A program made the translations under genes and the position numbers. From assembly GCF_006345805.1 (NCBI RefSeq), contig NC_043011.1, positions 39,258,464 through 39,322,463 of the forward strand: DNA of 64,000 nt. The letters run 5' to 3'. Positions 28,590 through 28,754 of this stretch are shown here, piece by piece; the first letter of the stretch is position 1; every line of letters starts with the position of its first letter. The DNA is from Octopus sinensis. Its lineage: Eukaryota. The notes beneath the pieces were generated by a model. It had not been told where the DNA came from and did no database searches. It saw only the letters and a list, made by a program, of their open reading frames with translations.

Positions 28590-28630
28590 ACTCATGTTCT
28601 TTTCTTCTTTTTTTCTTCTTCCAGGTAAGT
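28590..28630 (+). promoter_or_regulatory. Candidate recursive splice site (ratchet point), AG|GTAAGT
   Basis: ttgac branch-like motif, about 26-nt uninterrupted pyrimidine tract, CCAG (AG 28623-24) directly followed by GTAAGT. Confidence 0.55.
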
Positions 28631-28754
28631 GATTGAAAATTCAATTATGAATCGGAGGTCATCAGACCAATCAATGTTAGTTGTATGTGCTACAGTTGCA
28701 AAGGTAAATTACTTCACTGCTGCTTTATTTCCCTTCTTCTCTTAATTTACTTTG

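What the first reader, a model, noticed from the sequence alone, without database searches (positions are those of the whole stretch)
28590..28710. Near-perfect recursive-splicing (zero-length exon) signal AG|GTAAGT
Seen: branch-like TTGAC, an uninterrupted pyrimidine tract (tcttttcttctttttttcttcttc), CAG, then immediately the consensus donor GTAAGT. A second donor-like AAG|GTAAAT lies 79 nt downstream (28703/28704). Known: Drosophila ratchet points and vertebrate RS-sites in very long introns have this juxtaposed 3'ss/5'ss form, often with a cryptic downstream donor defining an RP/RS exon. Inference: a plus-strand gene with a very long intron is spliced stepwise here. I do not recall recursive splicing being well documented in cephalopods.
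Basis: partly seen in the sequence, partly recalled or inferred. Interest (0 to 1): 0.7.

Follow-up and report, generated by a model that had tools for sequence, protein, structure and literature searches.

The report
Candidate recursive splice site, unproven
A textbook "recursive splicing" signal (an intron end fused directly to an intron start) really is present at 28624/28625 and is the strongest splice-like signal in the 64 kb, but without RNA data or related genomes I cannot show that it is used.

Summary
A 26-nt pure pyrimidine run (28597-28622) is followed by CAG, then GTAAGT (28625-30). A second donor, AAG|GTAAAT, lies at 28703/28704. The site is the best acceptor of 3202 on the plus strand, the second-best donor of 4207 and the best combined site on either strand.

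It meets every sequence-level criterion that the Drosophila and vertebrate literature gives for ratchet points or RS-exons:
- TT at -5/-6.
- Branch-like A at -35 and -31.
- A 45-nt AG-free zone.
- A 79-nt cryptic exon with stops in all three frames.
- A downstream donor weaker than the regenerated one.

The core motif is expected 0.001-0.0035 times per window by chance. That is about 40-150 times in a roughly 2.7 Gb genome, so chance is not excluded.

The site lies in a 536-bp single-copy segment between two interspersed repeats. No coding exon is recognisable anywhere in the window. A persistent T>A skew fits plus-strand transcription.

Use in RNA, conservation and the host gene could not be tested.

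My estimates: functional recursive site about 0.45, chance motif about 0.33, ordinary expressed exon about 0.17. If real, it is a new member of a known kind in an undocumented phylum.

The parts
28587..28595 (+). Two overlapping branch-point-like motifs: TTGAC (A at 28590, -35) and CTCAT (A at 28594, -31).
   Evidence: Sequence read. Drosophila recursive branch points lie at -36 to -21 with a peak at -30. A YTRAY motif with its A at -40..-21 occurs at 14% of random positions (YTNAY at 33%), so this is weak support.
28579..28622 (+). AG-exclusion zone. There is no AG between the AG at 28577-28578 and the acceptor AG.
   Evidence: One search lists the last upstream AG dinucleotides at 28564 and 28577.
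28597..28622 (+). Polypyrimidine tract: 26 nt of pure C/T, with TT at -6/-5 and C at -3.
   Evidence: TT at -5/-6 is present in 99.5% of fly ratchet points. The tract continues a degenerate trinucleotide (NTT)n low-complexity stretch that starts near 28525.
28623..28624 (+). Acceptor AG (the 3' splice site of the upstream intron segment).
   Evidence: Acceptor PWM score 18.7 bits. This is rank 1 of 3202 AGs on the + strand and higher than any AG on the - strand (approximate PWM).
28625..28630 (+). GTAAGT: the donor that would be regenerated once an upstream exon is joined at 28625.
   Evidence: A perfect intronic match to the U1-complementary consensus. Donor rank 2 of 4207 GTs on the + strand. 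Combined acceptor+donor score 27.3 bits, against 22.1 for the next best on + and 19.6 for the best on -.
28625..28703 (+). Putative cryptic RS-exon of 79 nt (not a multiple of 3), GC 0.35.
   Evidence: Stops in all three frames. Frame 2 is open only from 28629, with an ATG at 28647 (MNRRSSDQSMLVVCATVAK) running to the donor.
28701..28709 (+). Downstream donor AAG|GTAAAT (junction 28703/28704), which would define the RS-exon.
   Evidence: Score 7.4 bits, about rank 80 of 4207, weaker than the regenerated donor. A donor this strong lies 30-110 nt downstream of only 9% of random positions.

Best explanation
The site is an intronic recursive splice site (ratchet point) with a cryptic 79-nt RS-exon, inside a very long plus-strand intron.

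Proposed mechanism, inferred by analogy with flies and vertebrates:
1. U2AF and U2 recognise the 26-nt pyrimidine tract, the branch A at -31 or -35 and the CAG. U1 binds the downstream AAG|GTAAAT at 28704. Together they define the 79-nt unit as an exon.
2. The upstream exon is joined to 28625, removing the first intron segment as a lariat.
3. The junction now reads exon|GTAAGT, a regenerated strong donor. It out-competes the weaker GTAAAT donor.
4. The next splicing step removes the 79 nt and the rest of the intron, leaving no trace in the mRNA.
5. If the 79 nt were ever included, the mRNA would carry a premature stop in every frame.

Shown here: the motif, its exceptional strength within the window, and its fit to every published sequence criterion. 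Inferred: transcription of the plus strand, location in a long intron, and actual use.
For: - Exact motif at the stated coordinates.
- Best acceptor on either strand, second-best donor on +, and best combined site by 5 bits.
- The core motif is expected only 1e-3 to 3.5e-3 times per window by chance.
- TT at -5/-6, as in 99.5% of fly ratchet points, and branch-like A residues inside the -36..-21 range.
- A 45-nt AG-free zone before the acceptor.
- A downstream donor at +79 that is weaker than the regenerated donor. The 79-nt exon is out of frame with stops in all frames, as described for cryptic RS-exons. Baselines are 9% for such a donor and 14% for a YTRAY branch motif. If independent, the full composite is expected only about 0.5-6 times per 2.7 Gb.
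- T>A skew on the + strand of +0.066 to +0.079, seen in 15 of 16 4-kb bins after masking simple repeats, with or without also masking window-internal repeats. This is the direction reported for coding strands of transcribed regions.
- No recognisable exon in 64 kb. Distances of >=28 kb upstream and >=35 kb downstream are within the 2.6-63.6 kb range of fly recursive segments.
- Invertebrates tested so far, including a sea urchin, show 4-22x enrichment of such sites on the sense strand of long introns.
Against: - No RNA evidence of any kind. No orthologous sequence could be retrieved, so the hallmark conservation is untested.
- The host gene and its strand are unknown. The lack of exons fits intergenic DNA equally well.
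- The pyrimidine tract is the end of a degenerate trinucleotide low-complexity stretch. This window has 60 such runs on the + strand, so it need not have been selected.
- About 40-150 core motifs are expected by chance in a genome of this size.
- Whether molluscs show the insect-like enrichment or the vertebrate-like lack of it is unknown.
- The T>A skew could have other causes and also favours chance Y-runs on this strand.
Confidence: 0.45

Rival explanations
1. The site is a chance juxtaposition that is never used. A microsatellite-derived pyrimidine run happens to be followed by AGGTAAGT in untranscribed DNA, on the antisense strand of a gene, or in an intron where it is ignored.
For: - The octamer occurs at its expected frequency, and Y-runs are abundant (60 on +, 28 on -).
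- Genome-wide, about 40-150 such cores are expected by chance (scaled).
- The tract continues a degenerate (NTT)n low-complexity stretch.
- No exon, gene or RNA family was detected anywhere in the window.
- In vertebrates such motifs are no commoner on the sense strand than on the antisense strand (ratios 0.9-1.5).
Against: - Within this window the event has p of about 0.001-0.004.
- It also carries a branch motif, TT at -5/-6, an AG-free zone and a suitably placed weaker donor. The baselines for two of these are 9% and 14%.
- It is the top-scoring acceptor on both strands.
- It sits on the strand that the T>A skew suggests is the sense strand.
Confidence: 0.33
2. The site is the acceptor of an ordinary expressed 79-nt exon (28625-28703) that merely begins with GTAAGT. 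It could be a 5'-UTR exon carrying the start codon ATG at 28647 (MNRRSSDQSMLVVCATVAK...), or a non-coding or poison cassette exon. Such an exon would still be recursion-capable, like the Ubx microexons.
For: - Strong acceptor plus a donor 79 nt downstream, a normal exon length.
- The ATG at 28647 has A at -3 and an open frame to the donor. It encodes a basic N-terminus followed by a hydrophobic stretch.
- Expressed RS-exons outnumber zero-length sites in mammals.
Against: - It cannot be an internal coding exon, because there are stops in all three frames.
- An open run of 19 codons is not unusual by chance (my estimate is about 0.3).
- No protein in the searched collections contains the peptide, but a 19-residue match would not reach significance, so this is weak.
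- GC is 0.35, no higher than the surrounding non-coding DNA.
Confidence: 0.17
3. The site is a non-splicing element: a U1 snRNA pseudogene fragment on the minus strand (the reverse complement reads ACTTACCTGG, the U1 5' end), part of a transposable element, or a U1-binding site that suppresses premature polyadenylation.
For: - The reverse complement of 28621-28630 matches the first bases of U1 snRNA (the U1 sequence is from established knowledge).
- The site is flanked by interspersed repeats at 28000-28215 and 28752-29113.
Against: - No U1 or other Rfam match at gathering score in the window.
- At E<=1 in 28300-28950 there is only a 17-bit chance hit to an unrelated family.
- The match to U1 ends after 10 nt.
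- Segment 28216-28751 has no other copy in the window, whereas both flanking repeat families do.
Confidence: 0.03

Closest known systems
Drosophila intronic ratchet points (zero-nucleotide recursive splice sites; Hatton 1998, Burnette 2005, Duff 2015, Joseph 2018, Pai 2018)
   Same: - (Y)n NCAG|GTAAGT core.
- Unusually prominent pyrimidine tract and TT at -5/-6.
- Branch motif about 30-35 nt upstream.
- Short out-of-frame cryptic exon ended by a weaker donor.
- Tens of kb from any recognisable exon.
   Different: - Fly sites are defined by junction reads, saw-tooth coverage, lariats and deep conservation. None of these is available here.
- The fly cryptic exon is typically about 50 nt; here it is 79 nt.
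- The genome here is far larger and richer in repeats, so the chance background is much higher.
Vertebrate recursive splice sites with RS-exons in long neuronal genes (Sibley 2015; Blazquez 2018)
   Same: - Exon-definition logic: acceptor plus downstream donor.
- Competition between the regenerated donor and the RS-exon donor.
- Premature stops if the RS-exon is included.
   Different: - Only about nine fully suppressed intronic sites were firmly established in mammals. Vertebrate long introns show no sense-strand enrichment of the motif.
- Vertebrate sites usually have less perfect motifs than this one (from my own knowledge).
Expressed recursive microexons (Ubx mI/mII type)
   Same: An exon that begins with a consensus donor, so it can be either kept or re-spliced out.
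   Different: Ubx microexons are 51 nt, frame-preserving and coding. The unit here is 79 nt with stops in all frames.

Membership tests
Intronic recursive splice site (ratchet point) | [quoted passage not shown] | tested here: met
   CAG|GTAAGT at 28622-28630. It is the top combined score in the window on both strands.
Intronic recursive splice site (ratchet point) | Prominent polypyrimidine tract with TT at -5/-6 (99.5% of fly sites) | tested here: met
   A 26-nt pure C/T run. Positions -6 and -5 are TT.
Intronic recursive splice site (ratchet point) | Branch point about 21-36 nt upstream, with no intervening AG | tested here: met
   Motif presence only. TTGAC has its A at -35 and CTCAT has its A at -31. 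The zone 28579-28622 is AG-free. The chance baseline is 14-33%. Actual branch use is not testable.
Intronic recursive splice site (ratchet point) | Lies on the sense strand of a long intron (flies: 11-133 kb) | tested here: inconclusive
   No exon is recognisable on either strand in 64 kb (Pfam; PDB). T>A skew on + is seen in 15 of 16 bins and fits a + sense strand. No gene was identified, and intergenic DNA is not excluded.
Intronic recursive splice site (ratchet point) | Junction reads from an upstream exon to the site, saw-tooth coverage in total or nascent RNA, and lariats starting at the site | not testable with these tools
   No RNA-seq is available. Exact look-ups of 20 ORF sequences from near the site (plus the mariner ORF as a control) in the assembly-derived protein collection found nothing.
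Intronic recursive splice site (ratchet point) | Strong evolutionary conservation of the core motif relative to its flanks | not testable with these tools
   No cephalopod DNA collection is on hand. A metagenome scan for the 24-mer across the site gave 0 matches. A protein-level search with all frames of 28167-28742 gave 0 hits.
RS-exon model (fly cryptic RS-exons / vertebrate RS-exons) | A downstream donor defines a short exon, and the regenerated donor is the stronger of the two | tested here: met
   AAG|GTAAAT lies 79 nt downstream. It scores 7.4 bits, against 12.7 bits for the regenerated site. The baseline for such a donor at 30-110 nt is 9%.
RS-exon model (fly cryptic RS-exons / vertebrate RS-exons) | The exon is out of frame or carries premature stops, so inclusion is deleterious | tested here: met
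   79 nt is not a multiple of 3, and there are stops in all three frames.
Ordinary internal coding exon | At least one frame open from the first base to the last | tested here: not met
   Stops in all three frames within the first 12 nt. Only a 5'-UTR/start-codon exon or a non-coding exon remains possible.
U1 snRNA gene or pseudogene (minus strand) | Match to the U1 covariance model beyond the 5' ACUUACCUG | tested here: not met
   No Rfam hit at gathering score and none at E<=1 in 28300-28950.

The most novel reading that the evidence does not exclude
Cephalopods remove their giant introns stepwise at insect-style ratchet points, and this is one of them. That would be the first recursive splice site described in a mollusc, or in any lophotrochozoan. 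It would imply that the mechanism, including the cryptic RS-exon and donor-competition logic, dates back to the bilaterian ancestor. It would also imply that the mechanism operates in a large, repeat-rich genome, where vertebrates show little motif enrichment.
Probability: 0.4. Interest if true: 0.6.

Novelty: new member of a known kind. Interest (0 to 1): 0.4.

Why it matters
Recursive splicing has been demonstrated in insects and vertebrates. Motif enrichment on the sense strand of long introns has been reported for insects and a sea urchin, but not for vertebrates. Nothing in the searchable literature addresses molluscs or cephalopods.

Cephalopods combine a vertebrate-sized, repeat-rich genome with very long neural genes. 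They are therefore a natural test of whether ratchet points are an ancestral bilaterian solution to long introns or a lineage-specific one.

This single locus gives a precise, cheaply testable prediction: junction reads into 28625, lariats from 28625, and a coverage step. It also suggests a genome-wide test, the sense versus antisense density of the motif in long introns. On its own, without RNA or comparative support, it is only a good candidate.

Tried and rejected
1. Host gene search. Stop-free six-frame segments of >=45 aa that passed low-complexity and repeat filters (142 segments, 10.5 kaa) were screened against Pfam. Only a sub-threshold zinc-finger match at about 8.1-8.26 kb (+) and a spurious Cornifin match to a tandem repeat at 25.6-25.9 kb (-) appeared. 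The slightly pruned 132-segment set was screened against PDB sequences and gave only the mariner fragment. No exon was found.

2. Three searches of the 5.8-billion-protein collection gave no hits: the near-site frames, the plus-strand ORFs and the minus-strand ORFs. The mariner fragment was included and is clearly recognisable (E=1e-20 to Mos1), yet it found nothing there. These negatives therefore have little power, and I do not use them as evidence that exons are absent.

3. Exact look-up of 20 ORF sequences from around the site (plus the mariner ORF as a control) in the assembly-derived collection found none. In the first call, ORFs with TTG or GTG starts were probably translated with L or V rather than M, so the second call repeated them with M.

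5. A metagenome scan for the 24-mer spanning the junction gave 0 matches.

6. U1 pseudogene idea (reverse complement = ACTTACCTGG): rejected.

7. Transposable-element-borne motif: 28216-28751 has no second copy in the window, unlike both flanks. Genome-wide copy number is untestable.

8. Depletion of AG after pyrimidine runs as a sign of sense-strand selection: it is present on both strands (about 0.35x), so it says nothing about strand.

9. A cluster of strong splice-like sites at 59.6-59.9 kb (+) lies in repeat or microsatellite sequence and has no coding support.

10. One literature query was badly designed and returned only irrelevant papers.

Full report
**Observation.** The plus strand reads ...ttgcTTGACtCATgttcttttcttctttttttcttcttcCAG|GTAAGTgattg....
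- The C/T run spans 28597-28622 (26 nt).
- The acceptor AG is at 28623-28624, and GTAAGT is at 28625-28630.
- The second donor, AAG|GTAAAT, has its junction at 28703/28704, 79 nt downstream.
- The TTGAC branch-like A is at 28590 (-35). A second motif, CTCAT, puts an A at 28594 (-31).

**Is it more than chance?**
- AGGTAAGT occurs once on each strand, against about 1.2 expected.
- Pure pyrimidine runs are frequent. There are 60 runs of >=15 nt on the plus strand and 28 on the minus strand.
- I kept the real run ends and used a first-order Markov model for what follows them. A run immediately followed by AGGTAAGT is then expected 3.5e-3 times (runs >=15 nt) to 1e-3 times (runs >=25 nt) per window, both strands counted.
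- The event is therefore rare for one window. Scaled to about 2.7 Gb, my assumption for genome size, roughly 40-150 such cores would arise by chance. I do not know how many windows the first stage read.

**Strength relative to the rest of the window.** I used approximate human-like splice matrices typed from general knowledge, so only the ranks should be trusted.
- The site is the best of 3202 acceptor-like AGs on the plus strand, at 18.7 bits against 16.6 for the next. It also beats every AG on the minus strand.
- It is the second best of 4207 donor-like GTs.
- It is the best combined AG|GT site, at 27.3 bits against 22.1 (7022, +) and 19.6 (47989, -).

**Fit to published criteria.**
- They have TT at -5/-6 in 196 of 197 cases.
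- Their branch points lie at -36 to -21, with a peak at -30.
- They lie in introns of 11-133 kb, with removed segments of 2.6-63.6 kb.
- Later work showed that each has a short cryptic RS-exon ended by a donor that is usually weaker than the regenerated one. [quoted passage not shown]

Here:
- Positions -6 and -5 are TT.
- Both candidate branch A residues fall in the published range.
- There is no AG between 28579 and 28622.
- The downstream donor scores 7.4 bits (about rank 80), against 12.7 bits for the regenerated donor.
- The 79-nt unit is not a multiple of three and has stops in all three frames.

Baselines in this window are 9% for an equally good donor 30-110 nt downstream and 14% for a YTRAY branch motif at -40..-21 (33% for YTNAY). 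If these are independent of the core, the full composite is expected only about 0.5-6 times per genome by chance. The independence assumption and the matrices are rough, so this figure is indicative only.

**Context.**
- The site lies in a 536-bp segment (28216-28751) that has no other copy in the window.
- Upstream is a SINE-like repeat (28000-28215) with more than ten copies in the window. Downstream is a repeat of about 370 bp (28752-29113) with copies at 20080-20454 and 37680-38058.
- The pyrimidine tract is the end of a degenerate trinucleotide low-complexity stretch that begins near 28525. It may therefore have arisen by slippage rather than by selection.
- I found no convincing coding exon on either strand in the whole window. 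Pfam gave only sub-threshold zinc-finger matches at 7.9-8.3 kb (+) and a spurious match to a tandem repeat. A screen against all PDB sequences gave only a Mos1-type mariner transposase remnant at 54593-54862 (-). There were no Rfam families and no tRNAs.
- Base composition is asymmetric across the whole window. T exceeds A on the plus strand (S_TA +0.066 to +0.079). This holds in 15 of 16 4-kb bins after masking simple repeats, with or without also masking window-internal repeats (p=5e-4). G and C are balanced.
- T>A is the direction generally reported for the coding strand of transcribed regions (citing Touchon 2004). The skew therefore fits plus-strand transcription through the whole window. 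It is not proof, and it also makes chance pyrimidine runs likelier on this strand.

**What could not be obtained.** There is no RNA-seq and no cephalopod genome collection among the tools.
- Protein-level searches with all frames around the site, and with about 5000 aa of ORF segments from each strand, found nothing.
- The mariner fragment, a valid positive control, also found nothing in that collection. Those negatives therefore carry little weight.
- Exact look-ups of 20 ORF sequences from near the site (plus the mariner ORF as a control) found nothing, and a metagenome scan for the junction 24-mer was empty.
- I could not confirm the taxon.

**Explanations.**
1. Functional recursive splice site with a cryptic 79-nt RS-exon in a long plus-strand intron: about 0.45.
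   - The upstream exon is joined to 28625 after exon definition by the 28704 donor.
   - The regenerated exon|GTAAGT donor then out-competes GTAAAT.
   - The 79 nt leave together with the rest of the intron.
2. Chance motif, unused: about 0.33.
3. Acceptor of an ordinary expressed exon: about 0.17. An internal coding exon is excluded by stops in all frames. A 5'-UTR exon carrying the ATG at 28647 (MNRRSSDQSMLVVCATVAK, open to the donor), or a non-coding or poison exon, is possible. Such an exon would still be recursion-capable.
4. U1 pseudogene, transposable-element-borne motif or U1 decoy: about 0.03. This is rejected by Rfam and by the single-copy status of the segment in the window.

The estimate for (1) depends mostly on an unknown. 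Molluscs might show the 4-22x sense-strand enrichment of such motifs seen in insects and a sea urchin, or the ratio near 1 seen in vertebrates.

**Comparison and novelty.** The closest known systems are Drosophila ratchet points and vertebrate RS-exons. In sequence the site is indistinguishable from a strong fly ratchet point. Membership cannot be granted, because the defining functional and comparative features are untested. The searchable literature has no paper combining recursive splicing with octopus (0 papers). Those combining it with "cephalopod" (1 paper) or "mollus" (2 papers) appear incidental: the terms are absent from their titles and abstracts, and I did not read the papers. If real, the site would be a new member of a known kind in an undocumented phylum.

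**Verdict.** This is a good, precisely testable candidate rather than a finding. Interest 0.4.

Noticed in passing
window 54593-54862 (-): C-terminal remnant of a Mos1-type mariner transposase: 81 aa align to Mos1 residues about 256-336 (E=1e-20) and to human SETMAR. Pfam did not detect it.
   Followed up: yes
window 1-64000 (+): Persistent T>A skew on the plus strand (S_TA +0.066 to +0.079; 15 of 16 4-kb bins after masking simple repeats, with or without also masking window-internal repeats), with G and C balanced. AATAAA occurs 70 times against 103 for TTTATT. This is compatible with one plus-strand transcription unit spanning the whole window.
   Followed up: partly
window 28000-28215, with more than ten further copies (e.g. 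38051-39534, 2606-2964, 22355-22654, 58439-58728; inverted at 3276-3495, 33391-33543): Abundant SINE-like repeat of about 200 bp, 65-76% identical between copies and preceded by (ATT)n. ARAGORN and Rfam find no tRNA or other RNA family in it.
   Followed up: partly
window 28752-29113, 37680-38058, 20080-20454 (+): Three same-orientation copies (76-78% identical) of an element of about 370 bp. It is flanked by (ATT)n on both sides and starts with a 28-nt palindrome, CCTCCGCCTTAGCGAAGGCGGAGG. The copy at 28752 begins 48 nt after the putative RS-exon donor.
   Followed up: partly
window 7867-8010 and 8098-8259 (+): Two degenerate C2H2-type zinc-finger-like ORF fragments (FVCTVCDRPCVSFAGFKSHL; ICNQCGCLFKTLSALKSHIRCH). 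They are below Pfam thresholds (17.9-19 bits individually, 25.1 in the concatenated query) and have no PDB match. They are probably decayed transposable-element or ZNF sequence. A possible mariner N-terminal remnant at 9092-9346 (-) was not confirmed.
   Followed up: partly
window 25596-25934 (-): A tandem repeat whose translation (…HVKVPLRCHMNAPVRCHVIVSVQCHIKVP…) gives a spurious Pfam Cornifin hit above threshold. It is an artefact of repetitive DNA, not a gene.
   Followed up: no
window 47989 (-) and 7022 (+): The next-best juxtaposed acceptor/donor motifs in the window are CCCCACCCCCATCCCAG|GTGAGT on the minus strand (19.6 bits) and TCCCCCCCTCTCGCTCTCTCAG|GTGTGC on the plus strand (22.1 bits, weak donor). 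Both are clearly weaker than the site at 28625.
   Followed up: no
window 59600-59920 (+): A cluster of strong donor-like sites (CAG|GTGAGC at 59623, CAG|GTGAGT at 59699) lies next to a (GAT)n/(CAC)n-type microsatellite and a repeat copy. It has no coding support and is probably chance.
   Followed up: partly
window 20500-21500, 31000-32400, 42300-43900: Long (TA)n/(TG)n-type microsatellite tracts pull GC down to 0.28-0.31 and generate most of the long spurious YIYIYI… ORFs.
   Followed up: no
whole window, both strands: AG directly after pyrimidine runs of >=12 nt is about 3-fold rarer than a first-order model predicts, on both strands (5 observed against 13.1 expected on +; 2 against 5.9 on -). 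This probably reflects microsatellite structure rather than selection.
   Followed up: partly
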